Below are positions 27,155-49,055 of a stretch of DNA of 64,000 nt, one piece after another. Source of the DNA: Diadema antillarum (taxonomy: Eukaryota); contig NW_027271785.1 in assembly GCF_040938485.1 (NCBI RefSeq), positions 1 to 64,000 of the forward strand. The letters are read 5' to 3'. The position numbers and the translations under genes were made by a program. The notes under the pieces were generated by a model. It saw nothing but the letters and a program-made list of their open reading frames with translations, ran no database searches and was not told where the DNA came from. Numbering within the stretch: the stretch's first letter is position 1; the number at the start of each line of letters is the position of its first letter.

Positions 27155-27313
27155 CCCTCTAGCCCTCCCTAGACCACGCCCTCTGGTCTTCTCTTGACCA
27201 CACCCTCTGGTCCTCCCTGGACCACACCCTCTGGCCTTCCCTGGACCACACCCTCTGGTCCTCCCTGGACCACGCCCTCTGGTCTTCTCTTGACCACACC
27301 CTCTGGTCTTCCC
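27155..27313. repeat. 24-bp minisatellite (CCCTCTGGTCYTCYCTKGACCACR)n, ~6.5 copies, at the start of the pseudokinase 3' UTR
   Basis: Direct reading; it abuts the TAG stop at 27313-27315. Confidence 0.9.
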
Positions 27314-27445
27314 TAAGTCATCTGATACTTCTGGTAGAGCTGCCATAACTGAAGGGGAGTAATATTCAGAATGTAATCTCTGCATAGAACCCAGTCCAGT
27401 CTGTCCTGTGCTTCACGGCATCCATGCATTCCAGGCATCGGCTTT
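27313..27445 (-). CDS. pseudokinase gene coding exon 9 (terminal; SHED-like C-terminal helices)
   Basis: Acceptor tttttcaatcttcag|, phase 2. Translates KPMPGMHGCREAQDRLDWVLCRDYILNITPLQLWQLYQKYQMT*, similar to the PEAK EDWLCxQYL helix. Confidence 0.8.
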
Positions 27446-30400
27446 CTGAAGATTGAAAAAGATGGGAACCACAAAATCAAACTTTATGTCTTTGATGGTA
27501 TATCTTCATACTTAATGGATAAGCTCAATAGTCTACTTGTTATGTGTGTTTACATGGAGCACACACATTACATTGACCTCTACCATGACAAGGGTCACCT
27601 GGTGGGAGAGCTAGTGGTATAGTTATTCACATGTTTTCTTTGGAATCTCATTCAAATCCTCACATAATTTGACAATTTCATCTCTACAAAGGTAACCCTT
27701 AGCCTTAAACAACAAGCTGGGAAAAAGCAACATATAAAACATTCTATTAGTGTATTATGCAAATTGTTCAAGACAACATAAATACAAACACTCCATCATT
27801 ATTGATTTCTGTAAAATGAGATGATCCTTCCATTTCTCCTATGAGGCAACCCATTTCTCTCTTTCATAAATCCTAACACCTACACTCTCTCTTCCTCCCT
27901 CTGGTAACCAAGGCAACAGGATGACAAAACTTACTCATGCTGGTCTGTTGGAGTAGATAGCAAGAGTCTCATTGCCTGTGAAGTTAGCCACATCTCACAG
28001 TCCAGCTGGCTTTTCATCTCATCCGGATGCGGGCCAAAGAGTAACATAGCAACCCTGGAGGCAGGATGCAAGTGAGAGATTAAATGTGATAATGAGCCCA
28101 TGAAACAAAGCTCAAATACAGAAATACTTTTTCTCTGGACTTTAAGGATTCTGATGATTACTCTTACACTAGTTCTTATCTAAAAACATATTTTTGCAGC
28201 AATACAATTATCTTATAAAAAGAAATTACATTGAATTGGTAACAATGAAAGTCACAGATGATAAAGCAGTAGCATGTACATGTAAGTGAAACTTCACAGT
28301 ATGAACAGAATTCAAAATGTCAACATTCTAATAAATGAATCGATATTGTTTATTATCAGTTATATCCTTTAGCAAATAAATTTGTCAGAACCACCAGGTA
28401 CATATCATCTCAAAGGGGAAGATGTAAGTAAAGCATATCACGTCAGATTTTTTGGATGGATGTGGTGTTTAATAATTGGTAGTCTGTGTGAAGTTGATGA
28501 CAAAGGGTCTTCACTCCACATCTCTCCTTCGTTTCCGTTCCCATGACTACAAGTATCTTTTATGTCTTCCACCTACAATACTGCTGATAGTATTGAATGT
28601 CAGCATGACACATTAGTAGACATGAATGTATTATCATGTCTCCTTCATCCCTATTTCCTCTGTCTCTTGTTTACTTCATATTCTGTCACTTGCTTTCATT
28701 TTCATGCAACACTGAAATATTCAGCTTCCTTCTCTTAAATCTTCTCTTTCCTGTTTTATAATCTCACACTTCTTCTTGTTTTTTTCTCTTTGTTTCTTTT
28801 ACAAACTCCACAGTTTCTTCCACCTGCCGCCCACCACACCAAAATACACAGTGTCTTTGTGTGACACAAGATTTCAATAAAATCAGAGAAACACTCACAC
28901 AATAAAGTGGTAAAGTGAACTTCAGTGGCTGTGTTTTTCTTGTCATTTGGCCACTAAATTTCCCCTTTTTCCTCCCAATCCCAAAAGACGATATGATGTC
29001 ATCTGTATTAACATCATCAGATGCAGTACTAATTATTTTTGTTTGTAGTTATTGTGAAGGGACTTGCTGTGACCCAGTTAATTGCAGTTTCATTTCGTTC
29101 ATTTATTTAAGCATGGCAACAAGATTCAGCCAATGCCTGTAGAAAGTAGTGTGCATTATAAGGTTTTTCTGGCGATCAAATTCTTGTTTGGGTGGAGAAG
29201 AAGTGACAGCCAGAAAGAAGAGCATTTGTCATCTTGTGTGCTGAGATTATTAAACAGTGTCTACCTGAGCAAGGCAGCACGGATTGGTGGTCTTTTCTCC
29301 GGGCTAGGATTCAGCATCTCTTTTAGGAGGGCAGAGAGAGCAGGAGATAGCCAGTCTGGTAGGCGGGACAGAAGCTCACTCGGGTCATCACCAATGGCCT
29401 GCTCTGATTGGCTGCTGGGTGTGACAAGGAGACTGCAGATCGTTGCTGCCACAGCGTACAGATCGGAGCTGGCGTAAACAGCTGACAAAGGAATCTATAA
29501 ATGGGGAGATTTTTTAAAGGAAGTGATCATTGCATGTAAGAGCTACATGCACCTGTCCTGGGTGCTAGCTCACATCAACAGGGGGAAACCACAAGAGGAC
29601 TGGCATCCTTTAATGAGGTGTTTTGACAAAACAGAAAGGCCAATCAGAATTCTTTGCACACATGAAATAATACGTAGCTGTATCTCTGGCTGACTACTGC
29701 AGAATGCAATTTGGGTGTAGATATCACTGGTATGATTGCACTTTTTATTTGAGTTGATGCATGGATAAGGAAGTATAGGCACCTAATCATATTACCAGTC
29801 ATTATTTATTGATGATGACCTTGTTCATCCTGCAGCTGGACTTACACCTAGTTATTGACCACACATCATACTAAGTTTGCCCACATCTAGATATTGCCTA
29901 AATCTCAATATTGCCCAGATCTCAATATTGCCTAGATGCCAATATTGCATGCCCACATCTCAAAACTACTTGTCTCAATGTTTCTCAGCTAAATGTACAC
30001 TATCAAATTTCTATTTATTTTCCATTCTCTCTTTTTCTCAACCTTTCTTTCATCCTCACTTTCTCTCAAAGGTACAATGTACATGTAGTGCTCCTCAATA
30101 AAAAGTAATCCTCGAACCCTGACAAATAATTACCAAAGCAGCTCTCACCAAGCTAAGAATGTACTGTGACAGTAGGTGACAATGCAGTTAACAATTTAGA
30201 CTTTCTAAACTGTGCTGGGCCCTCCATATCAACTAACCCTGTTGCTTTTTCAAACCTTGTGGGAAATTAAAGTATCTTGGAGGCAACTGATTAAGAGAGA
30301 ATGATACCCAAATATATAATCTATAAATATATGTATTTATGTACATGGTAATAGTGGAACAGATTAGTGAATTTGAGGAAAATTGACAATCTGTTCAAAA

Positions 30401-33400
30401 GTTATGAATTTTTAAAGACCTCAACAGTTGGTGACACCACTGCAGGACAACATACACAAAATTTAAAGAAAATTTAACATATTTCTATATTTCTAGTGTG
30501 TTGAAAGAGCATTTGACTTACCCTTTCAGCAAATAAAGAAAAAAAATAATGTTATCCTTGACACATATTGTACATGGGTATATCAGTAACAGTAACAAAA
30601 TGTGTCCTTTTCATTTAAACATTAAATCTTGTTGAATGCTCTTTAATACACTTGTATTTTCTTTCAAAACATTGGCCTGCAGTAATGTCACAACAGTTTT
30701 AGTTTTCTCAACTGGCGTTGGTGGGGCTGAACTTTAAAAAATTCATAACTTTCCAATTGATCGTTCAATCTTACTTGAACTTCACTGATGTGTTCTACTA
30801 ATATTGCTACAGTTATTCAATTCAAATACATATTTGGGTTTCATTAACCTTTAATTCTCTTTCCTTTTCCCTATACATAGTTTTCCCTGTATTCCCCACA
30901 ACCATGCGGTCTGTCTCAAGTTTCATTAGATGTAATATAAGGAAATATTTGTCTAACATTTCACGCCGGGTTTTTCCCTTCTGGTAGAAGGACCTATCTT
31001 TTCTGTCCATTCTGTCAGTTTCCATTTTTATTGCATTCATACATGTATGTACATATATTATTCACAAGGTGCACAAACTTAGAGTTGATTGATGAGGATT
31101 GAATGTTAGAGGTGCAGTACTGATTGATTTTTCCATCTCATACATTAGGTTCTAACTCACTGGGATTGCATCAAGTTTAATACATCATGAAAGAATTTCA
31201 TCCCACCACTCTTTTCCCATGGTTACATTAATTGTCTCTAAAGCTACATTTAACTTGGTGTCTGTATAGGCTTGTCTTTTGCTGTAAATATCATATAGAG
31301 CGGACTTCAACAGAAGAACAAATAGTAAATATGTGCCAATGTGACTCAGGAAAATGGTTTCATACAGGCATCATGTCAAAAAAAATATAATAAATAAAGG
31401 ATGGCCAATATTACTGCATGTCATTCATTATGGCAGCTGAATTGAAAACTGATAGCACTTAAAAAATTCTAATGGATATTGAGTTGTCATACTGGCAACA
31501 TTTGAATGACGTGTCTTAATGAGTATCAGACTCACCCTATGTTCCCAAATCTGGGGTGGTCCATGTATGGTGTGCTTGATTAGCTCAGGGGCCCTTGCTA
31601 AAGGGTTCCCTGCTCCAATTTGGGTGACATCATCAAATGGGCGAGGAGCCCCACCCTGGTCCAACATCAGAGCTGCATGTTCAAATCCACCGAGGGTGAC
31701 ACGCATGTCTGCTCCTACGTGAACATGTCGGGGTTGGATGTCACGATGCGCCACGCCCTGGGCTTGCAGGTGCTGCACCCCTAGGAGCAACTGAAGGAGA
31801 ATGCGCAGGAGGCAAGGTTCCCTCAACAAATCCTGTCCACCCTCCCCCACGACCGAATCAAACAGTTTCCTTATACTGATCTGAAAATCTGGGTACACAC
31901 TGAACACTAGTCTGCAGTCACTGTTCTGCTCTACGTTGATGCGGGCCAGTGTGGCCCTCGTGAGGTGATCATCTGACATTGCACATGTTTCCCATCTGGC
32001 AAGGGGCGGAGTCACATTGCGGTGGGGTGGTAGAGAGCGGAGTACATGAAGACATCTCTCATCACTCCAGACTGATGTATCTCCTTCACCTTGACAAGCA
32101 CTCACTTGGGATACCTAGGAACATATGAAATAAGTCAAAACATTTTTCTATATATTCTGACTGACTAATATTCCCTGTTTCACAATGTAAATGCCATGTT
32201 ACAGTCACACTCATGTGTGCATGAATGTATGGGTGTCACAAAACCAGGCTGAAAAAAAAAAAAAAAAAAAAACTTTCGCTTGTTCATCTTCTGTTGTATC
32301 ATACTGGTGTACCAGAAGCGAAATGAATTAACTCCACTCCATTAATAAGTTCTTTAATAGTTTAGCAAAGAAACAGATTTATTCTTTTTTATGACTGGCT
32401 GAATAAGCCATTTTCAAAATGTTCTTGATTGTGTGGAATGAAGAGATCAACACTCACAGAGGCTTGAGAATTTCACTTTGGAGCAATGATGAAGACAATG
32501 ACATGATTCATTTATACTTTGAATTTTTTACTCATTCCAACTAACTGACGAATTGCCCTACATCGACTTAAATAGACACTGAATTGATCAGTGTTTTAGT
32601 AGTAGCCATGACAAAAGAAGTTGTGGCCATATGTACTCCAGTAGGATTCAAAGCTACAACCTCCTGATTGCCAAACAGGCGTCTTTTCCACTAGACCACC
32701 GAGCTTCCGCCCGACAGCCTGTGCAGGTTCTTGCAGTGAGTACTGCATGCTTACCTCGACATCAGGCAATTTGTCTATCAGTTGCAATAAAATAGAATGG
32801 GAAAATTCACATTTTTGGACATTCAAAGCAAATTTTTCAAGTGGTGTTAAACCCCACTACCACTCTTTCCTTTTGCTAAAATTACCTAATTTTTTGTCAC
32901 CTGAGCAACATCACTCTCCACACTCCCCCCCCCCCCCCATTTTGGAACCCAAAGTTTCAGCTACTGCAAAACGAGGAATGTTCATGTGAATTTTAATTTT
33001 GCAAATTTCGCAAGAGCCAAGATTCACGAAATTAAAATTAAAATTTTTGTCTACACTATATGCATTGAATGTTAGAGGCAACTTGCGAAAATTTCCTGCT
33101 ACGAAAGAGGCCGTCGGTTCCAATTCGCGAAAATTTCATGCCGCGAAAATATCGTGTTTTACAGTAACATTTGCCAAATCATTCTGTCCTTGTCTGATCA
33201 ATATGTACCAGCACAATATTCAAGTCGAAGGGAATTGTGCATAGCATGGATTTCTTACCTCCAGGATGCGTCGTCTGCCAGACAGCGTACATCTAAATGT
33301 AGCAAACAGCTCATCATCTCTTCCCTCACACCGATGGATCCTCTCCTTTAGACAAATGTTGTCCTTTGCATCAGAAATGCTAACATCCAACGGGTACCAC

Positions 33401-36400
33401 TCGCTTGTGTCCATATCACGCAAAGACTCCATGGCAACACTATGCATGTTCATCACTGAATCCTTTGATCCGGGAGAAGATACATTGCCCACAGTGGCCT
33501 GCATAAATTGTAAGACTTGTGAGGGCGTCCTACTTGTATTGCATCTACTCAAGGAGTGCCAGCACTCCGAAGCGAAGCTTGATACTTTGGAACTTGGAGA
33601 AAGTTTGCTGTTAGAAGAAGAATTGGTCAGGAAGTGACTGTCTCTTCCCAGCGATGATTGTAAAGGGGAATGTCTGTCATTAGCCGATACGTGATCGGAA
33701 GGTGATGATTTTGACTCGTGCATACTGCCAGTAGAGGGAGCTCTCACTGAAACTTCTGAAGTGGTTGTCTCCAACCCTTGAATGTCACCGTTCACCTTTT
33801 GAACCACAGCTGTCTCATCCTCTTCCACAATGGTTTGACCTTGAGAGAGAGAAATGACCTGGGACTGTAGTTTGTGGTTGTCAGCCGCAAGGTCTCGGCA
33901 GGTTGCTTCCAGGAGCAGAATTCTCTGGTTGGCTTTTACGTCCAGCACAGTCGAGCCTCGCATCGTTCTATCTCCACATGACGTACAGCTTTGTTCTTGA
34001 CACGAGCTGTTGCTGCTGCTACTCCCCTCGGTGGTCATGGACAAATCCACGAGAGACTCGAGTGACTGAATTGTTTCCCGTAGATTTTGGTTTTCATTCA
34101 GGAGGGAAATCTTGTCCTTTTCAAGGTCTTCGATGATATTCAGCAACCTGTCGATTTCTGGAAAGGAGTCTGATTTGACACCGGGTCCATCGCATAGTTT
34201 CAAACACACATCACCATTGGTATTAGAGATCGTCGAACTTGATGCACAGGTCTGCCGTCCGTCTTTCGGTGACTGGAAAGAGCTGAATGACTGAGGCTTT
34301 GTTTCTCGGTCAAGTCTTTTACACTGATGATGACCACTGTGTCCATCAGCCTTACCAGAGGTCTCCTTTGGTCTGTTTTGAGTCTCTCCCTCCCTGTTGA
34401 CCGGTGGCTGCCGTAGGATGACGTGTGCAGGAGCTATTGGTGCCGTCTGAGCAACCAAATTTCTAGAAATAGCTGGAGGACTGTTCCGCCTCTTGGTCAA
34501 ATTGCCTGGATAATGATAATTAAAATTCTGGGAGATCCCCTGCAAGATTGGTGGTGATACCCTACCAAGGGTGGGGTATTGAACGAGTGGGCTGCTTGGG
34601 GACCTCCTGCCCTTGAAGTTAGCATCCCCAGCCTGGTTGGGGGGTGATAATCTCCCAACAGTCTGGAGTAGATTCGTTGAGTGACTTTTCACCAGCTCAC
34701 TATCATGCCTGTAAGATCATGAAATAAGTGGTGAAAATGATTCTTTGTTATGCTCTTAATACCGAAAACAATCATTTTACCATAAAATGTTTTAGGCTCT
34801 TCCTAAGCTTACATTTCACAAGCACCTGTAAATTNNNNNNNNNNNNNNNNNNNNNNNNNNNNNNNNNNNNNNNNNNNNNNNNNNNNNNNNNNNNNNNNNN
34901 NNNNNNNNNNNNNNNNNNNNNNNNNNNNNNNNNNNNNNNNNNNNNNNNNNNNNNNNNNNNNNNNNNNNNNNNNNNNNNNNNNNNNNNNNNNNNNNNNNNN
35001 NNNNNNNNNNNNNNNNNNNNNNNNNNNNNNNNNNNNNNNNNNNNNNNNNNNNNNNNNNNNNNNNNNNNNNNNNNNNNNNNNNNNNNNNNNNNNNNNNNNN
35101 NNNNNNNNNNNNNNNNNNNNNNNNNNNNNNNNNNNNNNNNNNNNNNNNNNNNNNNNNNNNNNNNNNNNNNTCTGGGTGCATGTGTGAGTGTGTAAGGGGA
35201 AGGGTCCTACTTTTATGGTGTCGGCTTGCAATAATCCCTCAGTAAAACAAGAGACATAATTTTATGCTCACAGTACGTCTGAAAACTGTAGAACTACCGT
35301 AAAACCAGGAACATGTGTGACATGAAACTTTCACAAATGGCAGCCGATGATCTTTTTGAAACTTTAATGAAACATGAAACGATTGGTCACTGGCATTCAA
35401 TACCTCACGTAGACAAAATCTTTTGTGTGCATGCTACTTTTGCAAATGTTTCATGCACGCAAAAATTTCCCATTTTACACTAAAGAATGTGAACAAATTG
35501 TCATACTGGGCCCTCCATATGCAAAGTCAGTAGTCCTGGACTGACTTCTTTTGGCTGACTGTGAATGTATTAAAGATGAAGCCCTGATCAGCAATACAAT
35601 AATAATGGCATTTGAGAGTGGACTCAATGTAACAGAAAAGTGAGAATAGCTATACAGAATTACTAATTCACTTTGAATAATCAAAATGAATGTACAAGAA
35701 CATACTAATTTTTACAAAAGTTTTAATCTTCTGATAATTTGCGCACTACATACTCTAAAACTGAAAATGCATGGTCACGTAATAGTAAGTTGTCTTAACA
35801 AGATGATTAAAAAGGTGGGGGGGGGGAATAGTTAAGGGATTGTTGGCGATATTGCATTATATGAGTGGCTCCTACAGAAAATTTAAGTTAATGGTATGAG
35901 TTACTCATTTCAAAGTGCTTCAACTGTTCTAAAGTTCTACATTGAGTGACAGATGAGGACTTAAGTCAAACCCAAAGAGATTTTTCTCCTCATCACCACT
36001 AGAGGGCAAACTATACAATTGTGTCTGAGATTTCATGGAGGCTGCCATTACTGAATTAGAAATGGCAGACTTTGCGTGCTAAAGTAACATTTTTACAGTG
36101 CATATTTGAACTTTTATGCGAGTATGCACTTCTTGATTTGGCTGATCTTCAGTTGCTCACATGCTAGCCCGTTAGCATGAGGGGTGAGCCTACAGCCGCA
36201 CATCTCTCAGCGCTCCCTGTGTGCTCACAAAGCAATTGTACAGGGTGTATGCATACTTTGCACTCTAGTACCTACTCGTTATAAGCTCTTTGGTCAAACC
36301 TCAGTGTTTGAAATGCAAAATCAGGGACTTAACATCCTTCTTCATTACCAAATCAAGCCCATCGCATGACTCATTTTGTATCATTCACTCCTATGCCAGT

Positions 36401-39400
36401 CATGATCTACTAGTACCAGGTATAATTATATCCAGTCATCTATCTCGTCACCTACTCTCAGAGGAACGAACCTAACCTGTGGACGGGAGAGGAGCAGTCA
36501 TTGTTCATGATCTGGCTCTGGCGCAGGAGTTGTCGTCGTAGACTGCCTCGCGGGCGGTTGCCTGATAACAGTGACTCATCACTCTCACTTGGTATCCTAG
36601 CAACGTTCTGGTAGGACAAGGGCAGGGAGGAGCTTCGGTATACTGCTGAGAAGAGAAACACCCAGGATGAGGTCAAGAATACAAATTTGGATGCTGCACT
36701 TCAAAATGACAAACTGAAAAACCAGACACATTCAAAATTTTCTCGAATCGAAGCCGATGGCCTTTATCTCACATGAAAATTTTGCACATTGCCGAACAAG
36801 AATGTGTTACTTTACATTGTCATGGATGGATGTTGTAAACACAACACTGTATGATTTGTGTGGAAACTTCATAAATGAAATGAAATGAAAATGAAAAATG
36901 ACAAATTTACAACTACACTGTATACGACATGCACATGTACTAGTAATACAGGGACGTGTTGAACACACACTGCTTGCTGGTTGATATAAAACACATAACA
37001 ATCTAAATGCACACTACTTAAACATACATAGTTTAAAAAAAACAACAACAAATGTGCACAACCAGGATGTGTACAAGTAGTTGACTTTGGAAGCACTCAG
37101 CATGACCTGAACTGTAATGTGCCCATGTGCATGCATACTAGATTAATTTGATCAATTACTTGGGAGGGGTAAAGTGTTCATTCCTCCTGAGCTTATATTA
37201 ATATCTAACACAAACTTCTGCATGCATTTTACTTTTTCTGAATCTTGGGTCCAAGCAAATTCGCAAGTGCATCCTAAAATTTCCGGTTTTACAGTATGCA
37301 AGTGAACTGTTCAGTACTTCTTAAGCTGCCATGTTAGACAAAAAATAGAGTTAAGATATTGTTATTATCATTTTATTATTTGCACTTTTATTAATGCCAC
37401 TCTCCAACCTCACTTTACATTAAAATCCAAGAGAAACATGGATGAGAATCACCTCTTTTTCAAGCTGAAAGTAAAACAGAAATCATAAAGACAGCTTATT
37501 GAAATAGAACTAGTGGGAGAAGTGTTACTGATGAGAATGAGTAGAACTACAGATGATATCATTTCTACAGGATTTCACTACTATGATGTCTAAAAAAATC
37601 ATTAAATATAGTTTCCTGTGGACTATCAAAATGAATATGTATGCTTACAATGTCAAATTTCGTGTCATCACTCACAAAGATGAGAAATTCTGGAGACTAA
37701 AGATTTAATGAAAGTATTGACATCGGCCATGTATGTATGACAAGTAAGAGCTGTACATTCTTGATTTTTAATGATTATTTCTTAATTTTATTTCTAACAT
37801 CTGTGAGAAAAGCAGAATCTACAAATCCAACCACAACCACAAATGTCAGATGCTATACATAGACTAAAGGCCATGTGGGTATTTGCACAGTAGAGGGGTT
37901 GCTATGGTAACAAGATGAGGACAAACACCTCTCTGATTGGTCTCTGGAGCCAGAAGCTTGGTGATGGCGGTGTGTCCCTCTCCCTCAGCCTCCTGCTGGG
38001 GTGTCTTGCCATTGTTGTTGAGGATGCCTGTCTGGGCGTGGTAGGAGAGGAGAAGCTGGCACAGGTGGATGGAACCCCGGAAGGCTGCCAGATGGAGGGG
38101 TGTGTCCCCCTTCTCACTCTGAACATTAACATTGGCCCCCCTGAAGGTGGAGAAAATTATAAATACATCATTTTATTCCTGTGGCACCATCTGGTATCAC
38201 ATGCTTTGTTCAGAACATTTTCCAGATATCATGAGTGACTCTTTCAACATGTTGAAAAGTACGAAAATTGAATGCAAGTTAATGCTTCTTCATGTATCTC
38301 TACTATTGTCTATCAGTAGCAAGATTACAAGGAAACCAAAGCCCAAATACAAATGTGGATTGACTGAAAGCAGCACTGTTAGTAAAACAAGTCAGTGAAA
38401 GTTTGAGGAAAATCAGACAAACAATTCAAAAGTTATAGGTTTTGGTGCCAATATCGTTGGATCAGGAGACTACTTCACTTCATAATATGAAGATAAACAA
38501 CAATATGAAGTAAATACAAGGGGAATTCCACAAAATTTCATTTTTCATGAAAAATATACATTCCATTGACTCGTTATTGACATATAGTAAGGTAATATTA
38601 TTTTCCCTGCTTTTTGAAAGAGGTAAGTCAAGTGCTCTTCCATTGTGCTACAGAACTGAAAACATGTTGACTTTTTTAAAAAATCAGCTAGGTTGACATA
38701 TACTGTAAAAGTTGTTATTTTCGCAACGGTTTAATTTTTTACTAATTTCATGAATCACTGTTGGGCTGCAGATTTAACAACATGCAAAATATCACAAATG
38801 GACAGGCACTTACGATAGCCTTGTTGTCAAATCGTGAAAAACAACATCACACAAAAACATATCTGTGACCTCCTATATCAAGAAAAAATCTGAATGCGCA
38901 AATAACATCTTTTACAATACTGCATGCTTAGGCATGATGGACTATCAGCCCCTGTGCCAAAACAATGAGCCCTAACATGAAGAAAGAAGCAATTTAACTG
39001 CCAGTAAGTCAACTAAAATGACATTCATTGGAATACCACAATAAAAAACTCATGACCACATGACAGTCATGTCATAAACAACATCCTCCTTAGTTGTTAC
39101 AAAATGACAATACTCCTGATATTATCTTACGAGATCTGTACGAGGTATATCAAGGACATTTATATATGTGACCCTGCACCTCAAAACAAACAAAAAGTCG
39201 CCAGACATGAATTTTCAATTAAGACCATATTCTGAAAGAGCAGACTTTAAGCTTTAAAATGATGCATAACTCAAATCAAATGGACTCTCCTAACCTATCT
39301 AAATATTGGAAAGAAAGCCCAAACTCAGGAAAAGTGTGAACTGAGAAAAGAGGCTCTGAAGTACAGAGACTATTCAAGCGCTTAATCTTTACCGAACCGT

Positions 39401-42400
39401 GCTGCCTGTGCGATGAATGGGACAAAAAACAGGAAGTAAACCACCAGAGTAACGACAATGAAGGGATTATCAAATTAAATTGATATTAAGCATGCCTCAT
39501 TAACACATTCTGTCCATAATTAATGCCAACTTTCAAAGCAGTAGCACTATCCTTTCAAAAGTTATTAGAGTTGAAAGTGAAGAGTGTGGACAAGGTTTTT
39601 CAGAAATGAAAAAGGGATTCTAAAGACACACCTAATCACACTATTCTACCAAAAATGTTCGAGATAAACTGCTAAAAAACACACTTTCCTGCCCGTTTTG
39701 TGATACCAAATTTTAGGATAATGTAAACGAAGACCCACTCTTTCAGAAAATATGAAAAAGTCAAGTTCAACTAGGTTGACCAATTTCACTTATTTTCAGT
39801 CCTCGCGCAAAATCAGTGTGTGCGACTTTATGTTCGTTTTGAGGTGCACGGTCACATATATCATTTTAATACCAGTTTTCAGCATTCTCAATCACATAAT
39901 AGAAAATATTTTTCTGACATTTTCTGACCCCCCCCCCCCCCGAAAAAAAAATACAAATAATCTTAATACAAAATATGCATCATCTGTTTGGGTAGATCAT
40001 GATATTGTTCCTTACCATTATAATCTTCTTCAATTCTGATATGAACTTCTCTTTCAAATAAATATTGCAATTTAAATTCACAACAGTATTTTCCTGTTTT
40101 AATTCATAAAAGTATACTTGTGACTGCACCAAAATGCAATTTTCGAAAGCAAATCTAATTCAATTTAGGGGGGGGGGGGGGCCTATAAGCTTTCAGCAAA
40201 TGCATTCCTGTTATTTGAAAATCAACATTATACAAGTTTGATTATTGTTGTCAAATAAAAGAACAAAATGTTTAAATCACACTCACTCTTATAAAGGCAA
40301 GTAAATCTTCATCTACACTGCAATGTAAACACCTTCCATCTGCTTCGACATGCCATCAACACATTTTTTTTTTCCCCTGGTGATAAATCTTAAATCATCT
40401 TTTAAAAGATTATGATTGGTTGAATTTGTTTTCTTTGCAATAACATAAGTTTTGTTGAATCATGTACACCCAATCAAATGGTGAGTAAATTAATTCTACC
40501 CAACATCTATAAATGTATATGGTCCATATAAACATAAAAGTCATTAAAAAAACTACTACATATCAAGACTGTAACTGTTAAGGACATGATGTTCATAAAT
40601 GTCATCCAAAAATGCCAATCTTTCATGAGCAAAGTAAAAAACTGTACATCATCTGTTACAGGTATCAATGTGCTTATCAAATTTACATGCATTTGTTTGC
40701 TAGATACCCATGTAAATGACATCTATACAAGTAATGAACAGCATACAGTGATGGAGGATTATCTAATGACATGGGCCCTACCTGTTGTATAAGAGATAAA
40801 CATATCAGAAAAGACATTTCTATGAAAAGGAATTACATATAGCATCCAACATACAGACAGTTAAAGGGAGTGTACAGTACTGGTTGAAGTAGGGATTCAT
40901 GTTTTGAACATTCCTAAGTGAGATAATGAAAAGCCTCTTATGAAATATGAAAGAGCATGTAATTTTAAGAAGGATTCAACGTTTATTTGATGAAAATTGG
41001 TTTTCAAATGGCTGAGATATCCCAAAAAGTGCTAATAATAAAAGGCGACATGCCCCAACTTTATTAGTATCTCTTTGTTTCTCCTTGTTTTTGGATATCT
41101 CAGCCATTTCAAAACCGATTTTCATCTAATAAACTTTTAATACCCCTTAGAACTGCATGCTCTTTGACATCTCATAGAGTGGTTTCTGAATATCTCACAA
41201 AACGTTAAAAGCTAAATCTTCACCTCGACCAGAACTGTACACACCCTTTAACCTTTAAATGTCACTTTGCTGCATAATCAGTAAATATACAGGAAATTCT
41301 CACAGTAGAGAAAACATATCCCTGTTGTGGGAGAAGCTTCATGAGTTAGGGAAAATCCCACGTTTATTTATTTATTAGGAGCGTGCGAGGTCCCGCAATT
41401 ACAGTTTAACTATCAGTCTACTGGGAAGCTACAAATTTGGCCAAACACTACAGCTGAGATGTCCATGGGTAAGCAAAATCCACATCACACAGTTTTGAAA
41501 TAACATGCCCTGGAGGTAACGAAGTCTAAATATATTAGCCTCATGACTTCACCAGCAATTAGACAGATCCCACTTTGGTTTCATATTCTAGAAAACATGC
41601 ACATTATAGAGATGTGAGGACCATACTCTCTTTCTATGCAGGGTATATATCACACATGGAAAATTCCAATATTTCAAATGACCTTGCTCTATATAAAAAT
41701 CTACTTTTCCAACAACAACAAAATTGTATGACAAAACAGAATTGCTTCTTTTTTTTAAACATCTGAAAATAAAACTGGTTTTCAAAGCCTTAACATCTAC
41801 TCCCCCCCCCTAAAAAAAAAAAAAAAAATGAATGTCACAGTAGAATTGCGTATTATTTGAAAATATCTGAAAATAAAACTGGTTTTCAAAGCCTTAAAAT
41901 CTCCTTTTCCAACAACAACAACAAAAATGAATATTAAAATTGAATTGCTTCTTATTTGAAAATATCTGAAAATAAAACTGGTTTTAACACCTTAAATCTA
42001 CTTTGTGCATGAATTCTTTATCCCAGAGACAAATATTCTTTTGATTGGATGAATGTTCTACTGACATAGCTCCTCTTCATCATCTATGCTCTAATAAGGT
42101 GAAGGATAGAGAAAGTCAAATACACAGAAATAATTAGAAATATCCATACCCAGTGAGCAGTGTCTTAGCGGTGTGATAATGCTTGCGGTCAACAGCGGCC
42201 AGGAGTGGGGTGAACTGCCACTTGACCGGTATCTCCACATCAGCACCATAATGTAGCAGGAGCTCAACTATTTCTTTATGACCACTGGAGGAATCAGAAG
42301 GAAAAAGGGAAACAAACAAAGAAAGAAAATTAATGACCACTATGAAGAGAAAATAAACTCAGGGTTTATAGTCAAAGACGGGAGAAATGGAAAGCCCTCC

Positions 42401-42489
42401 TTGATTCTAATATAATTTATGCATGCATGTGTACATGTATATATTTACGTATGTATAGGCCTATGTACCTGTGTGAGTATATATACATC

Positions 42490-42542
<53 letters not shown>

Positions 42543-45500: not shown

Positions 45501-46009
45501 ATTTATCAATGAGATACTCTAGAAGAGGGTTACATTGTTAATATGCTGTCATAATCTTTTGGTGGTTGTATAAATGGACCTGTTGGGTTAGGGTGCTGCT
45601 TTTTTTTTCTGCCAGAAGTTGAGGGCTTCAATATGCCCAAACAATAGTTGATTTTATATGCATCAACATAATAGCAATGCACCCAACTCATTGCATAACC
45701 TACTGAATCATCTTTTTGTCCTCATTTTGGAACCCCCATAGTTATGGCCAAAATAAGTACAGTGTTTCAAAAACAAATAGGTCTACATTGGAGTACTTCC
45801 TGCATGAATAAATGTGGATCCATGCAAACCAGATCAATTTCAAATTTATTCAATAGAAGTATTGTTTGTCAAGATCAGAAGAGATATTAGACTTGGTTTT
45901 TAGCAGTTCCAATAATATAATTTACATTCTGAAATTATAATCACAGCTTTTGTGTTCTGAAATCTCCAAGAACATTTTATTTTTTTATTTAAAGCAATAT
46001 AAACATATG

Positions 46010-46043
<34 letters not shown>

Positions 46044-49000
46044 ATCAAAAACATAATATTGCAATCTTAAACATCATCTGCTAATAACATAATAATGATA
46101 TATTCATTTTACTTTTAGTCTTTAATGGAGACTATCAAAAACAAAATCTGTAAGCTATTATTTCATCACACTTGGCATAAATACATATCAATGATAAATT
46201 ATCATGTTTTGATAATGTCTAAACATGATAAATTTCACATCAAAGTATCCAGAGGTATAAAGTTGAACACTGACATCTTGTTACTAAATGTTTAAAAATA
46301 AAGAAAAAACAAATGTATTTATGTGTGGATACTGTATCCAGTCATGACTTTTTCAGCACTCATTTGTATGCTAAAAATGACAAGTTTCCAATAATTACAG
46401 TGCAGTAGAGGCCAATGTCATACAAGACTTCTTACATATTAGTCACTATCTATATGACAAAAAAAAAAGATGTTTCATGCAGTATTCCATCTATAATTTT
46501 AATGCAATGAATTATGCCAATTTTGACTACATTCTTTAAATCGAAACTCATCAATATTGGCTTTTGCACACCATGTTCAAATTTTCAACAGTACACATGG
46601 TACTGACATTAGCATTAACAGACAGCCAGAAACAATAATAATAATGAACCAGAATACTGCCATATCTGAGGCAATCAGGCAACCTGGCAACGTTAGGGTA
46701 ATAATAATAGCAGGGCCCTCTGGTAGAGCAGTGGTAACACTGAAGAGGCTANNNNNNNNNNNNNNNNNNNNNNNNNNNNNNNNNNNNNNNNNNNNNNNNN
46801 NNNNNNNNNNNNNNNNNNNNNNNNNNNNNNNNNNNNNNNNNNNNNNNNNNNNNNNNNNNNNNNNNNNNNNNNNNNNNNNNNNNNNNNNNNNNNNNNNNNN
46901 NNNNNNNNNNNNNNNNTGTGAGATTGACTCCTATGGCAGATCATGAACCATGAGTTCATTACAGGGAGAACAATCATCGACCAAAATCTAGGATTTTTTC
47001 TTTCTCTTAAATTAGCTAATATGATTTGCTGTCAAAATCTGTAAGCATAATGATGAATGCCACTGAACAGGAACTGAGCAGCATTTCTGGTTACCTGGAT
47101 TAGCTCATATCCTGTAGTTAAACTCTTTGAAATGTCTTGAGGTGAGCCATACTATGCATCTCTGAATATCATCTTCAATTCAAGAATATTCCTGGTCATC
47201 CAGAAGCATGTGTCACATGGTCATAATTGTTGAGTAGTAGTCTTTTAAAGCTTTCATTCAGTGAGTTATATTGCGCTCAGCACGTCAACAGCAGCAGACC
47301 CGACGCATCTGCTCATCAAGATTCCCACTTTATCATTTTTTTTTCCTGTGCATTGTTTGATGAAGGCATGTATGTTAATCTGGAAGTATCACACCTGGTA
47401 ATGGGACACAAAGACTTTATAAGGCTATCTACACAGGCCTTTCCGGAAGTCCATGATTATATATATAAATATTTTTTTTTTCTACATGTGGTAGCATTTA
47501 TAGTTCATCATAATGGCATCTTTACACTGGCTCTCAGCTCTATAAGATGAATACAAGTGCACAGACATAAAGCAGCCCAGTCCAAAAATGGCAAAAAGTT
47601 AACCTCTCTTTTGAATGAAACCGTGCATGTGCACAAAGAGTTGTACATCAATGGCACTCTGCTAGAAGCTGGAAAAACCAAAGAATTTATTCACAGTATC
47701 ACTGGTGATATACCACCCAGCCTTCTTTCATAACAGCAATTTTAGAGCTCTACAATACATGCAGGTATTAAGTAATAGTTCATTGGGAAATGCTTCCTTG
47801 ATTGTGATGGCTATCAAGACAGATTACCTTGATGACTCATATACAGAACACACACCAGTTAACAGCAATTAGGGAATTTCCCTTTTTGCCCCTTTTAACT
47901 CTAAAGCAGAAATTAATACCTTATTATAAGCACAAATTTATTCATACATCATTGTAGTTACTGCAAACAGGTCCAGATGTTAAGAATGATTTGTAAGATG
48001 AGCATGACGAAAATGGAGATTTTCAACAAACAGCAATCTGATTAATATTGACCACATGACATCATACCATATTTCTTGTCCTCCCACGGGCAGAATATTC
48101 TGTCATATTTCCCATGGACAGGTATTTTTGTAATGTTTCCCACAGGAGAACATTACCGCGCAAACAACTGGCCACTGATACAAAATAATGGAACAATATC
48201 ATTAGTACAAGTGATAGAATAGATTTTTGTATTACAAACAATGCTAAACACTGAGCAACCAACAGTTTGACACACACACAGAGAAATGTGACTCACAAAA
48301 GCACCACAAAAGAATTGGGTACTATATTCATGAGGCAATGAAAAGCAGCATTTTACTGCTTGTGATGCTGTGAAATAGTTATACTAAAACTGAAAGTGGA
48401 GGTATTTGTAAGGTTCCCAAAGTACATTGACTAACCCCTTTAATATGATATAACAAATGATGAGTCTTGATGTTTGAAACATAATAGACTATTCTTTGCT
48501 CAGAATTTAGGATGCTATTTCAGGGAAGTTTGAGTCTCTCATCTTTATATCTAAACTTACAATAAATTAAGAAATTGTTAAATCAGTTATCTTTTGCACT
48601 CGGGCAGGTATAGATGAATTTGGCTTGTTTTTAATTCCTTGAAATAAAAACAAACATTATGACGTAGAATTAGCCAAAAAAAAATAAATGTGTGTCTTCA
48701 TTTTCAATATAGTTCATGTTGCACAAAAATGTCCACACTGCTAAACTGTTCTCTCTTCAAAAAGTCATTAAAAGCATTCAAACCCCTTCTGCTGGACATT
48801 CCGTATCTTCCCTCCCATGTCTGCTACTGTCTATTGTCCCAAGGTAACTGTAAATGCAACATCTGTTGATGCTTGAAATATCAAGGAATAGTGAAAGGGA
48901 CTACCAGCTCACCAGTTAGCAGCCCAAAAGAGGGCCGTACCCCCAGACTCCCTCTCTCGACAGTTGATGTCGGTACGACCCGTACGCAGCACCTGCTCCA

Positions 49001-49055
49001 CTGTATCGTAGTGCCCATTCTTGGCTGCCTCTATCAGGGTTGCCATGGTAACCAT
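27313..49055 (-). CDS. ankyrin-repeat / coiled-coil / PEAK1-Pragmin-like pseudokinase, full 9-exon CDS (1056 aa)
   Basis: complement(join(27313..27445,27935..28054,29265..29494,31536..32114,33259..34708,36477..36645,37929..38140,42150..42284,48913..49055)) = 3171 nt. All introns are GT-AG, phases match throughout and there is no internal stop. Confidence 0.85.
27935..28054 (-). CDS. pseudokinase gene coding exon 8
   Basis: Acceptor cctgcctccag|, donor |gtaagt, phase 2-2. Translates VAMLLFGPHPDEMKSQLDCEMWLTSQAMRLLL, matching the LLWGP...WL motif after the PEAK/PINK1 kinase domain. Confidence 0.88.
29265..29494 (-). CDS. pseudokinase gene coding exon 7 (C-lobe, alphaF-alphaI)
   Basis: Acceptor ccccatttatag|, donor |gtagac, phase 0 to 2. 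Translates IPLSAVYASSDLYAVAATICSLL...LLKEMLNPSPEKRP (subdomain IX Asp and XI Arg). Confidence 0.9.
31536..32114 (-). CDS. pseudokinase gene coding exon 6 (alphaC to activation segment)
   Basis: Acceptor gttcctag|, donor |gtgagt, phase 0-0. Contains LPPHRNV, LLQLLLGVQHLQAQGVAHRDIQPRH, LGGFE and GNPLARAPEL. Confidence 0.92.
32600..32745 (-). mobile_element. tRNA-derived SINE fragment
   Basis: A-box-like TGGTCTAGTGG (32688-32698) and a decayed B-box AGCTTTGAATCC (~32644-32655) at tRNA spacing; no intact cloverleaf. Confidence 0.6.
32962..33166. mobile_element. short MITE with TACTGYAAAA...TTTTACAGTA ends (TA-flanked, Tc1/mariner-like)
   Basis: Inverted termini. Related copies or fragments lie at ~35290-35480, 38701-38919, 51812-52010, 57590-57769, 61975-62180, 62900-63020 and 63939-64000. 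Confidence 0.7.
33259..34708 (-). CDS. pseudokinase gene coding exon 5 (1450 bp: Ser/Pro-rich linker, two coiled coils, start of the kinase N-lobe)
   Basis: Acceptor tcttacag|, donor |gtaaga, phase 2 to 0; long stop-free frame. Confidence 0.9.
34835..35170. other. assembly gap (N run) in a pseudokinase intron
   Basis: Run of N; the flanking exon phases join without it. Confidence 1.
36477..36645 (-). CDS. pseudokinase gene coding exon 4
   Basis: Acceptor ctcttctcag| (NAGNAG alternative at 36642), donor |gttagg. Phase 1 to 2 bridges exons 3 and 5. Confidence 0.8.
37929..38140 (-). CDS. pseudokinase gene coding exon 3 (ankyrin repeats 4-5)
   Basis: Acceptor ccaccttcag|, donor |gtgttt, phase 2 to 1. 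Translates GANVNVQSEKGDTPLHLAAFRGSIHLCQLLLSYHA...NGKTPQQEA, a frame missing from the supplied ORF track. Confidence 0.92.
38330..38700 (+). mobile_element. partial Kolobok-like MITE (family A)
   Basis: Colinear similarity to 60065-60385 and to the sequence resuming at 61344. Confidence 0.65.
39163..39860. mobile_element. TA-flanked MITE with ~40-bp TIRs (TATATGTGACCSTGCACCTCAAAAC)
   Basis: The left TIR at 39163 and right TIR ending at 39860 are near-perfect inverses. A related, partly inverted copy lies at ~42570-42990. Confidence 0.8.
40865..41247 (+). mobile_element. Kolobok-like MITE family B (383 bp, TTAA TSD)
   Basis: TTAA|AGGGAGTGTACAG...CTGTACACACCCT|TTAA; a near-identical 383-bp copy is at 60386-60768. 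Confidence 0.85.
41700..42000. repeat. degenerate ~100-bp tandem triplication
   Basis: The core ATCTGAAAATAAAACTGGTTTT recurs at ~41761, ~41864 and ~41964. Confidence 0.75.
42150..42284 (-). CDS. pseudokinase gene coding exon 2 (ankyrin repeats 2-3)
   Basis: Acceptor ttcctccag|, donor |gtatgg, phase 2-2. Translates GHKEIVELLLHYGADVEIPVKWQFTPLLAAVDRKHYHTAKTLLTG. Confidence 0.92.
44135..44271. other. assembly gap (N run)
   Basis: Run of N between a (TG)n tract and the retrotransposon fragment. Confidence 1.
44272..44520 (+). mobile_element. 3' end of a non-LTR retrotransposon with a restriction-like endonuclease (R4/Dong-like)
   Basis: 44272-44415 translates VVVGALGTTPKQLRWHLDDVGVPDRVQMLQKAALLGTARILRKVPEV*, the typical RLE C-terminus (GALG...LQKAALLGTARILR). 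A short UTR and an (ATA/ATG)n tail follow. Confidence 0.85.
46752..46916. other. assembly gap (N run)
   Basis: Run of N. Confidence 1.
48913..49055 (-). CDS. pseudokinase gene first coding exon (ankyrin repeats 1-2)
   Basis: Translates MVTMATLIEAAKNGHYDTVEQVLRTGRTDINCRERESGGTALFWAAN. There is an in-frame upstream TGA, and the second ATG (49046) has Kozak accATGg. Donor |gtgagc; an acceptor just before 49100 implies a further 5' UTR exon upstream. Confidence 0.88.

What the first reader, a model, noticed from the sequence alone, without database searches (positions are those of the whole stretch)
27313..49055. Ankyrin-repeat-fused PEAK1/Pragmin-like pseudokinase, an architecture I do not know from the literature
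Seen: nine - strand exons join in phase into 1056 aa, comprising four ankyrin repeats plus a capping repeat (~aa 5-160), a ~530-aa low-complexity/coiled-coil linker, and a kinase fold with helical extensions on both sides. Established: vertebrate PEAK1, PRAG1 (SgK223) and PEAK3 are catalytically dead scaffolds with long disordered N-termini and no ankyrin repeats. The kinases I know with ANK repeats (ILK, TNNI3K, ANKK1/RIPK4, DAPK1, LRRK) belong to other families. Inference: this is either an invertebrate, possibly ancestral, PEAK-family scaffold with a folded ANK recruitment module, or a lineage-specific exon-shuffling product paralleling ILK (ANK + pseudokinase).
Basis: partly seen in the sequence, partly recalled or inferred. 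Interest (0 to 1): 0.8.

Follow-up and report, generated by a model that had tools for sequence, protein, structure and literature searches.

The report
Ankyrin-fused PINK1/PEAK-like sea-urchin pseudokinase
This is a real nine-exon sea-urchin gene for a protein with ankyrin repeats, a coiled-coil linker and a dead kinase domain; the kinase belongs to the PINK1/PEAK group, and the gene is one member of an unstudied animal family that still looks like a working kinase in sponges and molluscs.

Summary
Nine minus-strand exons with canonical GT-AG sites join in phase into 1056 aa. All three N gaps lie in introns. The model is colinear with Diadema setosum XP_072179406.1 (1060 aa, 93% identity). 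This genome's own RefSeq record covers only the last 217 aa.

The layout is 4 ankyrin repeats plus a cap, a Ser-rich linker with two heptad segments, then an N-terminal helix, a kinase fold and a C-terminal helical extension.

The "PEAK1/Pragmin-like" label is only half right. A profile of the whole domain hits PINK1 first (E 4e-30, against 1e-17 for PRAG1). The C-lobe plus C-terminal helices alone hit PRAG1 slightly better than PINK1. In fold comparison PEAK1, PINK1 and Pragmin tie at Z 26-27.

The architecture is not a lineage-specific shuffle. It occurs in crinoids, sea stars, urchins, molluscs and a sponge, always as "uncharacterized". Sponge and mollusc members keep all catalytic motifs. 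Every echinoderm lacks the catalytic-loop Asn and all but Lytechinus pictus lack the DFG Asp; Diadema also lacks the beta3 Lys.

dN/dS is 0.18 overall and about 0.06 on the ankyrin repeats and the C-terminal extension, so the gene is under constraint. My reading is a dimerising scaffold; that part is inferred. I found no paper on the family.

The parts
48913..49055 (-). Exon 1: start ATG, ANK repeat 1 and the first half of repeat 2 (aa 1-47 plus 2 nt)
   Evidence: Donor GTGAGC. Same N-terminus as D. setosum P0099.
42150..42284 (-). Exon 2: rest of ANK repeat 2 and most of repeat 3
   Evidence: Pfam Ank E 2.4e-8. The repeat is continuous across the E1/E2 junction.
37929..38140 (-). Exon 3: end of ANK repeat 3, ANK repeat 4 and the half-repeat cap (to about aa 160)
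   Evidence: Pfam Ank_2 E 5.9e-11.
36477..36645 (-). Exon 4: linker with an acidic Ser/Leu-Leu motif followed by a basic SLRRQLL motif
   Evidence: The motif is shared with Lytechinus, Patiria and Acanthaster in the alignment.
33259..34708 (-). Exon 5: Ser-rich linker, two heptad segments, N-terminal helices and kinase strands beta1-beta3
   Evidence: Orthologous exon in L002 at 92% nt identity with one 12-nt indel.
34039..34155 (-). Heptad / leucine-zipper-like segment 1 (aa about 405-443)
   Evidence: Weak Pfam NET2A and bZIP matches in this segment. Heptad score peak. dN/dS 0.13 for aa 401-515.
33838..33939 (-). Heptad segment 2 (aa about 477-510)
   Evidence: Weak Pfam HALZ and DivIC matches in this segment; heptad score peak.
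33418..33525 (-). Predicted helices N-terminal to the kinase fold (aa about 615-650), the counterpart of the PINK1 N-terminal helix and the PEAK alphaS/alphaN1 helix
   Evidence: Helices at residues 10-23 and 30-44 of the model, at low to moderate pLDDT. PINK1, PEAK1 and Pragmin alignments reach model residues 1-9.
33259..33261 (-). Codon at the beta3 (VAIK) lysine position; it is Glu here (RILEV)
   Evidence: Motif table. Lys is kept in all other members, including crinoids, sea stars and camarodont urchins.
31536..32114 (-). Exon 6: alphaC to the activation segment of the kinase fold
   Evidence: Pkinase E 1.6e-4. This was the query of the exhaustive search.
31725..31748 (-). Catalytic loop HRDIQPRH: HRD is kept, the Lys is Gln and the Mg-binding Asn is His
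31680..31688 (-). G-F-E in place of D-F-G (the metal-binding Asp is lost)
   Evidence: The Asp is lost in every sampled echinoderm except Lytechinus pictus (LGDLEDA), and kept in sponge and molluscs.
29265..29494 (-). Exon 7: C-lobe, alphaF to alphaI
   Evidence: Identical to the RefSeq fragment P0001.
27935..28054 (-). Exon 8: first helices of the C-terminal extension (LLFGP...W...). An in-frame TAA sits exactly at the donor.
   Evidence: Aligns with the C-terminal extensions of PINK1 and PRAG1.
27313..27445 (-). Exon 9: last helices of the C-terminal extension (DW.LC.DY...LWQL) and the TAG stop
   Evidence: This motif is conserved across the family and matches the PRAG1 C-terminus. dN/dS 0.057 for aa 973-1056.

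Best explanation
The locus is the Diadema (most likely D. antillarum) single-copy member of an old, unnamed animal gene family. The family's layout is four ankyrin repeats plus a cap, a disordered Ser-rich linker with a coiled coil, then a kinase domain flanked by an N-terminal helix and a four-helix C-terminal extension.

That flanked kinase module is the kind found in PINK1 (N-terminal helix plus C-terminal extension) and in PEAK1, Pragmin and PEAK3 (the SHED module). This family appears to be a third branch of that group. It is neither PINK1 itself nor the known echinoderm PEAK.

In sponge and molluscs the domain keeps every catalytic residue and is probably an active Ser/Thr kinase. By the last common ancestor of echinoderms the catalytic-loop Asn, one of the two metal-binding residues, had been lost; the other, the DFG Asp, is gone from every sampled echinoderm except Lytechinus pictus. 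Diadema has also lost the beta3 Lys and the catalytic-loop Lys. The protein here most likely cannot transfer phosphate.

Inferred working model. The protein acts as a non-catalytic scaffold. It pairs through the coiled coil and the flanking helices, as PEAK and PINK1 do. It recruits partners through the ankyrin groove and through phospho-Ser motifs in the linker. The dead kinase fold serves as a docking or allosteric surface.

Shown: the gene model, the domains, the family range, the motif loss, the affinity to PINK1 and PEAK, and purifying selection. Inferred: dimerisation, the scaffold role and the partners.
For: Gene model.

Family with the same architecture.
- D. setosum, Lytechinus, S. 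purpuratus, Patiria, Acanthaster, Antedon, Anneissia, Mytilus, Patella, Haliotis, Argonauta, Sinanodonta and the sponge Oscarella pearsei.
- Uninterrupted ANK-plus-kinase reading frames on 3.5-4.4 kb Logan contigs.

Affinity to PINK1.
- Family profile against PDB: the 12 best hits are all PINK1, E 4e-30 to 4e-25, and the next is 4e-20.
- The Mytilus domain alone gives the same picture.
- The Diadema domain aligns with human PINK1 into its C-terminal extension.
- Foldseek ranks 1-17 are PINK1.

Affinity to PEAK.
- C-lobe plus C-terminal-extension profile: PRAG1 1.8e-10, PINK1 6.5e-9, PEAK1 5.9e-8, then a gap to 1.5e-5.
- VIA-align: PEAK1 Z 26.9, PINK1 26.8, Pragmin 25.7. These are the only structures spanning model residues 1-451.

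Literature. The PINK1 N-terminal helix and C-terminal extension resemble the PEAK SHED module (PMC8767193; bioRxiv 10.1101/2021.08.05.455304). PINK was used as the related outgroup of PEAK (PMC8699254).

Third lineage. The urchin PEAK and PINK1 in PMC8699254 Table S1 are proteins of 1663 and 355 aa. This family in S. purpuratus is LOC593232, 1176 aa.

Motif loss.

Constraint. dN/dS against D. setosum is 0.18 overall, 0.067 for ANK, 0.057 for the C-terminal extension, 0.13 for the coiled coil, 0.16 for the C-lobe, 0.27 for the N-lobe and 0.24-0.35 for the linkers.

Gene tree. It follows the echinoderm species tree, with 100/100 support for echinoderm monophyly.
Against: - There is no transcript evidence from this genome; none was listed.
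- No tree containing PINK1 and PEAK sequences could be built, because none was obtainable as a tool sequence. The "third branch" reading therefore rests on score differences and on different protein lengths and loci in S. purpuratus.
- The profile search with echinoderm sequences alone put PLK3 and NEK2 slightly above PINK1. The PINK1 signal for the Diadema protein itself is thus modest and is carried mainly by its less decayed relatives.
- HRD is retained in Diadema. Kinases lacking canonical residues can still bind nucleotide or catalyse, so loss of activity is a prediction.
- Dimerisation and scaffold function are untested.
- The N-terminal helices are modelled with low confidence (pLDDT 30-67).
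Confidence: 0.75

Rival explanations
1. It is the true invertebrate PEAK-family (NKF3) orthologue, showing that ancestral PEAK scaffolds carried an ankyrin module.
For: PRAG1 is the best solved match for the C-lobe plus C-terminal helices, with a shared DW.LC..Y(L/I) end motif. PEAK1 has the nominally highest fold Z (26.9). It is a pseudokinase in this species.
Against: The whole-domain profile prefers PINK1 by about 40 bits, and so does Foldseek. S. purpuratus has a separate 1663-aa protein used as its PEAK in a published tree, while this family there is LOC593232, 1176 aa. Sponge and mollusc members look catalytically intact. No EPIYA or Crk-type motifs are present.
Confidence: 0.12
2. It is a lineage-specific exon-shuffling product that parallels ILK (ankyrin repeats plus a pseudokinase).
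For: The domain order resembles ILK. All echinoderm members are degenerate.
Against: The same architecture and co-linear sequence occur in crinoids, asteroids, echinoids, bivalves, gastropods, a cephalopod and a homoscleromorph sponge. The gene tree follows the species tree within echinoderms. ILK is not among the listed sequence or fold matches.
Confidence: 0.02
3. The Diadema domain is still an enzyme. It would use a non-canonical mechanism, with the retained HRD Asp and a substitute Lys or metal site as in WNK or CASK, or it would be a nucleotide-binding switch.
For: HRD and APE are retained, and the alphaC Glu appears to be retained by eye although the alignment column is gapped in Diadema. 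The C-lobe is under purifying selection (dN/dS 0.16).
Against: Four catalytic positions are hit at once: beta3 K to E, catalytic-loop K to Q, N to H, and DFG D to G. The N-lobe is the least constrained folded part (0.27). Camarodont urchins go further, with HGN and a deleted activation segment. That pattern fits decay of the active site rather than rewiring.
Confidence: 0.1
4. The ankyrin exons and the kinase exons belong to two neighbouring genes that were joined wrongly.
For: This genome's own RefSeq record holds only the C-terminal 217 aa. No RNA reads were available. There are gaps in introns 1 and 4.
Against: All junctions are in phase. The D. setosum RefSeq model uses the same nine exons. 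More than 20 orthologues have the fused form, including single contigs with one uninterrupted reading frame. No stop-free alternative start precedes E5.
Confidence: 0.02

Closest known systems
PINK1 (NKF2 family; structures 6eqi, 7t4k, 7mp9, 9eih)
   Same: It is the best sequence relative of the whole kinase domain (E 4e-30) and the best Foldseek match. It shares the N-terminal helix, kinase fold and C-terminal extension. In the printed alignments it shares motifs such as FLVM..Y..TL, HRD(I/L)K.DN, (G/A)GN...APE and the L(W/Y/F)GP start of the C-terminal extension.
   Different: This protein has no mitochondrial presequence or transmembrane segment. The N-terminus is ankyrin repeats, and the highest 19-aa hydropathy window lies inside the kinase. 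It has a 450-aa linker with a coiled coil. It is catalytically degenerate in echinoderms. Echinoderms have a separate PINK1.
PEAK1 / PRAG1 (Pragmin, SgK223) / PEAK3 (NKF3 family; structures 6bhc, 6ewx, 5ve6)
   Same: A pseudokinase flanked by helices that form the SHED dimerisation module. It is the best solved match for the C-lobe plus C-terminal helices. Fold Z 25-27 over the whole model. It has a long disordered region upstream of the kinase.
   Different: The N-lobe and catalytic core are much closer to PINK1. This protein has an ankyrin domain and a coiled coil. No EPIYA, Grb2 or Crk docking motifs were found. The wider family has intact catalytic motifs. The urchin PEAK in the literature is a different, 1663-aa protein.
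ILK (integrin-linked kinase)
   Same: N-terminal ankyrin repeats followed by a pseudokinase that works as a scaffold. This is an analogy of architecture and of the proposed mode of action.
   Different: ILK belongs to an unrelated kinase subfamily (TKL-like; from my own knowledge). It has no coiled-coil linker and no flanking helical module. It is not among the listed sequence or fold matches.
RefSeq predictions: XP_072179406.1 (D. setosum), LOC593232 (S. purpuratus), XP_038044457.1 'ankyrin repeat domain-containing protein 31-like' (Patiria miniata), Mytilus LOC143065164
   Same: These are orthologues with the same architecture.
   Different: They are database predictions only, named 'uncharacterized' or after the ankyrin repeats. 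No function, family name or link to PINK1 or PEAK is recorded.

Membership tests
PEAK family (NKF3: PEAK1, PRAG1, PEAK3) | Pseudokinase fold flanked by an N-terminal helix and C-terminal helices alphaJ to alphaM (the SHED module) | tested here: met
   The model aligns with 6bhc over residues 8-449 (Z 26.9) and with 6ewx over 1-451 (Z 25.7). The C-lobe plus C-terminal-extension profile hits PRAG1 at E 1.8e-10 to its last helices. PINK1 shares this feature, so it is not exclusive to PEAK.
PEAK family (NKF3: PEAK1, PRAG1, PEAK3) | Groups with PEAK proteins, not with other kinases, by sequence over the whole domain (orthology) | tested here: not met
   Whole-domain profile: PINK1 92-108 bits, PRAG1 67, PEAK1 59. 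S. purpuratus holds this family as LOC593232 (1176 aa), next to a different 1663-aa PEAK. No joint tree could be made.
PEAK family (NKF3: PEAK1, PRAG1, PEAK3) | Catalytically dead across the family | tested here: not met
   It is dead-looking in echinoderms only. Sponge and mollusc members keep K, E, HRDxKxxN, DFG and APE.
PEAK family (NKF3: PEAK1, PRAG1, PEAK3) | Disordered N-terminal region with SH2, SH3 or PTB docking motifs (Csk EPIYA, Crk PxxLPxK, Grb2 YxN) | tested here: not met
   A regex scan of aa 161-640 found no EPIYA, no PxxLPxK and one YxN. It found three R..[ST].P motifs instead. The motif list is from my own knowledge of the family.
PINK1 (NKF2) | Kinase core and C-terminal extension most similar to PINK1 | tested here: met
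   For the Diadema sequence alone the signal is weaker (E 1e-6). In a profile of echinoderm sequences only, PLK3 and NEK2 score slightly higher.
PINK1 (NKF2) | N-terminal mitochondrial targeting sequence and transmembrane helix | tested here: not met
   The N-terminus is an ankyrin domain. No hydrophobic segment lies outside the kinase core.
PINK1 (NKF2) | Ubiquitin/Ubl Ser65 kinase activity using the insert-3 substrate site | not testable with these tools
   This needs biochemistry. The Diadema domain lacks the catalytic residues.
Pseudokinase (operational definition: loss of the beta3 Lys, the HRD Asp or the DFG Asp) | At least one of the three catalytic residues is missing | tested here: met
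   The beta3 Lys is Glu and the DFG Asp is Gly. The catalytic-loop Lys is Gln and the Asn is His.
Ankyrin-repeat proteins | Tandem 33-residue ANK repeats recognised by profile | tested here: met
   On the D. setosum orthologue, Ank_2 E 4e-27 and Ank E 1.8e-23. Window exons score E 1e-4 to 6e-11.

The most novel reading that the evidence does not exclude
The ANK-coiled-coil kinases are a third, previously unnamed branch of the PINK1/PEAK clade and its missing link. They have a PINK1-like active core joined to a Pragmin-like C-terminal helical module, and they date back at least to the sponge-bilaterian ancestor.

If they are sister to PEAKs, their sponge and mollusc members would be the closest catalytically competent relatives of the PEAK pseudokinases. 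Echinoderms would then show a second, independent, stepwise conversion of this module from enzyme to scaffold: crinoid, then sea star, then Diadema, then camarodont urchin. A bolder version is that active members phosphorylate ubiquitin-like substrates as PINK1 does.
Probability: 0.3. Interest if true: 0.75.

Novelty: new variant of a known kind. Interest (0 to 1): 0.58.

Why it matters
PINK1 (Parkinson's disease) and the PEAK pseudokinases (cancer signalling) are each treated as small, isolated kinase families. Their likeness has so far been noted at the level of structure, and by using PINK as the outgroup in a PEAK tree.

A family that joins a PINK1-like core to a Pragmin-like C-terminal module at the sequence level would give a concrete handle on how the flanked kinase module arose. 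So would its presence from sponges to echinoderms.

The echinoderm series is also a natural, graded example of an enzyme turning into a pseudokinase. The ankyrin and C-terminal helical modules stay under strong constraint throughout, which says which surfaces carry the remaining function.

On the practical side, this genome's annotation holds only a 217-aa fragment of the gene.

Tried and rejected
- A missing ANK exon between E2 and E3. I looked for one and dropped the idea: E2 joins E3 directly in phase and gives a regular repeat.
- Direct splicing of E3 to E5. It is out of frame, which led to E4.
- Exon 6 alone against PDB. It gave only generic kinases (OSR1, AMPK, CHK2), with neither PINK1 nor PEAK in the best 60. 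That query was too short and too decayed.
- ESM Atlas feature searches. They returned only generic kinase clusters (IRE1-like, STK40) and did not discriminate.
- Atlas fold search. The best match is an unnamed rotifer kinase cluster (TM 0.68 over residues 1-451), which could not be identified further.
- Word-index searches. They found family members but never PINK1 or PEAK proteins, so no joint tree could be built.
- RNA evidence. No run was listed.
- Earlier findings of this scan near the locus: none.
- P0030, a metagenomic pseudokinase with an 'LWGP' C-terminal extension. It sits on an unidentified, apparently intron-poor (possibly eukaryotic) contig and was not informative.
- Literature searches for an ankyrin plus PINK1/PEAK-type kinase. 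They found no description. Subscription papers, such as Lecointre 2018 in Structure, could not be read.
- Gaps were neither filled nor compared with other genomes. The D. setosum locus was used for exon sequences only.

Full report
**Source and gene model**

The window is eukaryotic, about 35% G+C, with four N runs. I rebuilt the minus-strand model by reading each boundary and assembling it in a script.

- The exons are E1 49055-48913, E2 42284-42150, E3 38140-37929, E4 36645-36477, E5 34708-33259, E6 32114-31536, E7 29494-29265, E8 28054-27935 and E9 27445-27313.
- All eight introns are GT...AG and the phases fit.

**Gaps**

- The gaps at 44135-44271 and 46752-46916 lie in intron 1. The gap at 34835-35170 lies in intron 4.
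- Ankyrin repeat 2 is continuous across the E1/E2 junction.
- An exhaustive protein search with exon 6 returned a 217-aa protein 100% identical to the model's C-terminus. This is XP_071508251.1 from Diadema antillarum, so the window is most likely from that species. Its cluster mate is XP_072179406.1 from D. setosum, 1060 aa (P0099).
- The model aligns with P0099 from first to last residue at 93% identity. The single 4-aa indel lies inside E5.
- All nine exons have full-length counterparts in the same order in the D. setosum locus L002, at 92-97% nt identity. Joining those counterparts gives exactly P0099.
- No coding exon therefore needs to be hidden in a gap. I used exon sequence only from that locus, and I neither filled nor looked up any gap letters.
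- No RNA run was listed for this genome, so there is no read-level proof here.

**Anatomy**

- *Ankyrin domain, aa 1-160.* It has four repeats and a half-repeat cap. On P0099, Pfam gives Ank_2 E 4e-27, and the window exons score E 1e-4 to 6e-11.
- *Linker, aa 161 to about 612.* It is 17% Ser. It has three R..[ST].P motifs and no transmembrane segment. Heptad peaks lie at about 410-443 and 477-510.
- *Kinase module, aa about 613-1056.* This is a kinase fold with extensions. An AlphaFold2 model of P0099:610-1060, built on a 20-sequence family alignment, has pTM 0.80 and mean pLDDT 76.6. It shows two helices before strand beta1 at low to moderate confidence, and four helices after alphaI at pLDDT about 90.
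- *Catalytic positions in Diadema.* The beta3 Lys is Glu (RILEV). The catalytic loop is HRDIQPRH, where Lys has become Gln and Asn has become His. DFG has become GFE. APE is kept.

**The family**

The same architecture occurs widely, always under the name "uncharacterized" or "ANKRD31-like".

- Echinoids: Lytechinus (1172-1174 aa) and S. purpuratus (LOC593232, 1176 aa).
- Sea stars: Patiria (886 aa) and Acanthaster (875 aa).
- Crinoids: Antedon (858 aa) and Anneissia (866 aa).
- Molluscs: Mytilus, Haliotis, Patella, Argonauta and Sinanodonta. The Lottia model (599 aa) has the kinase module but no ANK.
- Sponge: Oscarella pearsei (858 aa).
- Two relatives of unknown taxon sit on Logan contigs of 4372 and 3474 nt as single uninterrupted ANK-plus-kinase reading frames. 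This suggests single mRNAs.

In a maximum-likelihood tree the echinoderm sequences form one clade with 100/100 support. Its internal order is crinoids, then asteroids plus echinoids. Stem branches are about 1 substitution per site. The pattern fits a single-copy orthologue that evolves fast.

**Motif history**

| Group | beta3 K | alphaC E | Catalytic loop | DFG position | APE |
|---|---|---|---|---|---|
| Sponge, molluscs | kept | kept | HRD(I/L)KxxN | DFG | kept |
| Unplaced Logan relatives | kept | kept | HRD(I/L)KxxN, except Logan833 (HRNIKSDN) | DFG | kept |
| Crinoids | kept | kept | HRDIKPDC, Asn lost | GGF | kept |
| Sea stars | kept | kept | HRDINAKA | GEF | kept |
| Diadema | Glu | retained by eye; column gapped | HRDIQPRH | GFE | kept |
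| Camarodont urchins | kept | not clear | HGNIHPGC | GDL in Lytechinus pictus (Asp kept), GGL in S. purpuratus | lost with a shortened activation segment |

The loss of the catalytic-loop Asn is shared by every sampled echinoderm class and so predates their split. The DFG Asp is absent from all of them except Lytechinus pictus. Later decay is specific to each lineage.

**Selection**

Nei-Gojobori dN/dS between the window and D. setosum (dS about 0.18):

| Region | dN/dS |
|---|---|
| Whole gene | 0.18 |
| Ankyrin repeats | 0.067 |
| C-terminal extension | 0.057 |
| Coiled-coil region | 0.13 |
| C-lobe | 0.16 |
| N-lobe with N-terminal helices | 0.27 |
| Linkers | 0.24-0.35 |

The gene is maintained. 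The most constrained parts are the ankyrin module and the C-terminal helices, not the nucleotide-binding lobe.

**Which kinase family?**

- Exon 6 alone gave only generic hits.
- The Diadema C-terminal 421 aa hit AMPK and PINK1 about equally (E about 1e-6). Only the PINK1 alignment ran on into the C-terminal extension.
- A profile of five echinoderm sequences put PLK3 and NEK2 just above PINK1.
- With the intact Mytilus domain, the 12 best solved matches are all PINK1 (E 2e-16 to 2e-10). The next is 4e-9, and PEAK1 scores 9e-6.
- With the 20-sequence family profile, PINK1 takes ranks 1-12 (E 4e-30 to 4e-25, 92-108 bits). EGFR follows at 4e-20, NEK1 at 3e-18, PRAG1 at 1.1e-17 (C-lobe and C-terminal extension only) and PEAK1 at 3e-15.
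- A profile of the C-lobe plus C-terminal extension alone reverses the order. PRAG1 scores 1.8e-10, aligned over 155 of 169 positions to the last helices and including the shared DW.LC..Y(L/I) motif. PINK1 scores 6.5e-9 and PEAK1 5.9e-8. The next hit is far behind, at 1.5e-5.
- Foldseek puts PINK1 at ranks 1-17 and PEAK1 at 18, with TM-score by query 0.53-0.60. Ordinary kinases reach about 0.42.
- VIA-align gives PEAK1 Z 26.9, PINK1 26.8 and Pragmin 25.7, which is a tie. These are the only structures aligned over model residues 1-451. WEE1 and the rest cover only 60-375.

**Literature**

- Two PINK1 structure papers state that the PINK1 N-terminal helix and C-terminal extension resemble the SHED module of PEAK1 and Pragmin (PMC8767193; bioRxiv 10.1101/2021.08.05.455304).
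- A PEAK3 paper reports one PEAK gene from placozoans to amphioxus and roots the PEAK tree with "related" PINKs (PMC8699254).
- Its Table S1 lists, for S. purpuratus, PEAK1 as XP_030856156.1 (1663 aa) and PINK1 as XP_003724360.1 (355 aa). The S. purpuratus member of the present family is LOC593232, 1176 aa, so it is presumably a third gene.
- No paper describing an ankyrin-fused PINK1/PEAK-type kinase was found. The searched library lacks most subscription papers.

**Conclusion**

The flanking-helix module and the Pragmin-like C-terminus are real. The core is PINK1-like, however, and the family is distinct from the known urchin PEAK and PINK1. It is ancient, and it looks active outside echinoderms.
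- "Lineage-specific exon shuffling" is excluded.
- The mechanism I commit to is a non-catalytic, probably dimeric scaffold. The coiled coil and the flanking helices would do the pairing. The ankyrin groove and the phospho-Ser linker motifs would recruit partners. This is inferred from anatomy, from the pattern of constraint and from analogy with PEAK, PINK1 and ILK. None of it was tested.
- The exact position of the family relative to PINK1 and PEAK needs a joint tree. I could not build one because no PINK1 or PEAK sequence was obtainable as a tool sequence.

Noticed in passing
window 27313-32000 (-): This genome's own RefSeq record for the gene (XP_071508251.1, D. antillarum) is a 217-aa fragment that starts at an internal Met in exon 6. 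The ankyrin and linker exons appear to be unannotated there, perhaps because of the assembly gaps.
   Followed up: partly
window 27148-27314: A 24-nt tandem repeat, 7 copies at 86% match, starts within the stop codon and fills the start of the 3' UTR. Read in another frame it gives a 'GRPEGVV'-like repeat.
   Followed up: partly
window 27931-27935: The donor of exon 8 (GA|GTAAGT) creates an in-frame TAA if intron 8 is retained. The protein would then end at ...TDQHE and lack the last, most conserved C-terminal helices. This could be a regulated short isoform; it is untested.
   Followed up: no
window 36540-36610 (exon 4): An acidic Ser cluster with Leu-Leu (SESDESLL) is followed by a basic SLRRQLL motif. 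It is conserved between Diadema, Lytechinus and the sea stars (SDSDDSLL...SLRKNLL) although it sits in the disordered linker. It could be a phospho-regulated sorting or binding motif.
   Followed up: no
P0121 and P0185 (Lytechinus, S. purpuratus): Camarodont urchin orthologues have decayed further: HRD has become HGN and part of the activation segment, including APE, is deleted. The two genera are only 60% identical in this domain, which is unusually fast evolution.
   Followed up: partly
P0129 (Logan, 833 aa): One mollusc-like transcript has HRNIKSDN (catalytic Asp replaced by Asn) while keeping the Lys, DFG and APE. This may be an independent step towards a pseudokinase outside echinoderms.
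   Followed up: no
P0044, P0007, P0014, P0048, P0066: These are more distant relatives without ankyrin repeats. Some are Ala-rich and probably algal or protist; one is filed as a bacterial MAG (Hylemonella), probably through contamination. P0044 keeps the 'EW..G.(D/E)Y' motif before the N-lobe and P0048 and P0066 an 'LLFGP'-type C-terminal extension. P0044 and P0048 show their own loss of catalytic motifs.
   Followed up: no
window 44272-44415 (+), 42419-42643, 44066-44134: Intron 1 holds a short open frame right after a gap (…GALGTTPKQLRWHL…ALLGTARILRKV) that looks to me like the tail of a retroelement ORF; Pfam gave no hit. (CA)n microsatellites lie in intron 1, one of them directly abutting the 44135 gap.
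   Followed up: partly
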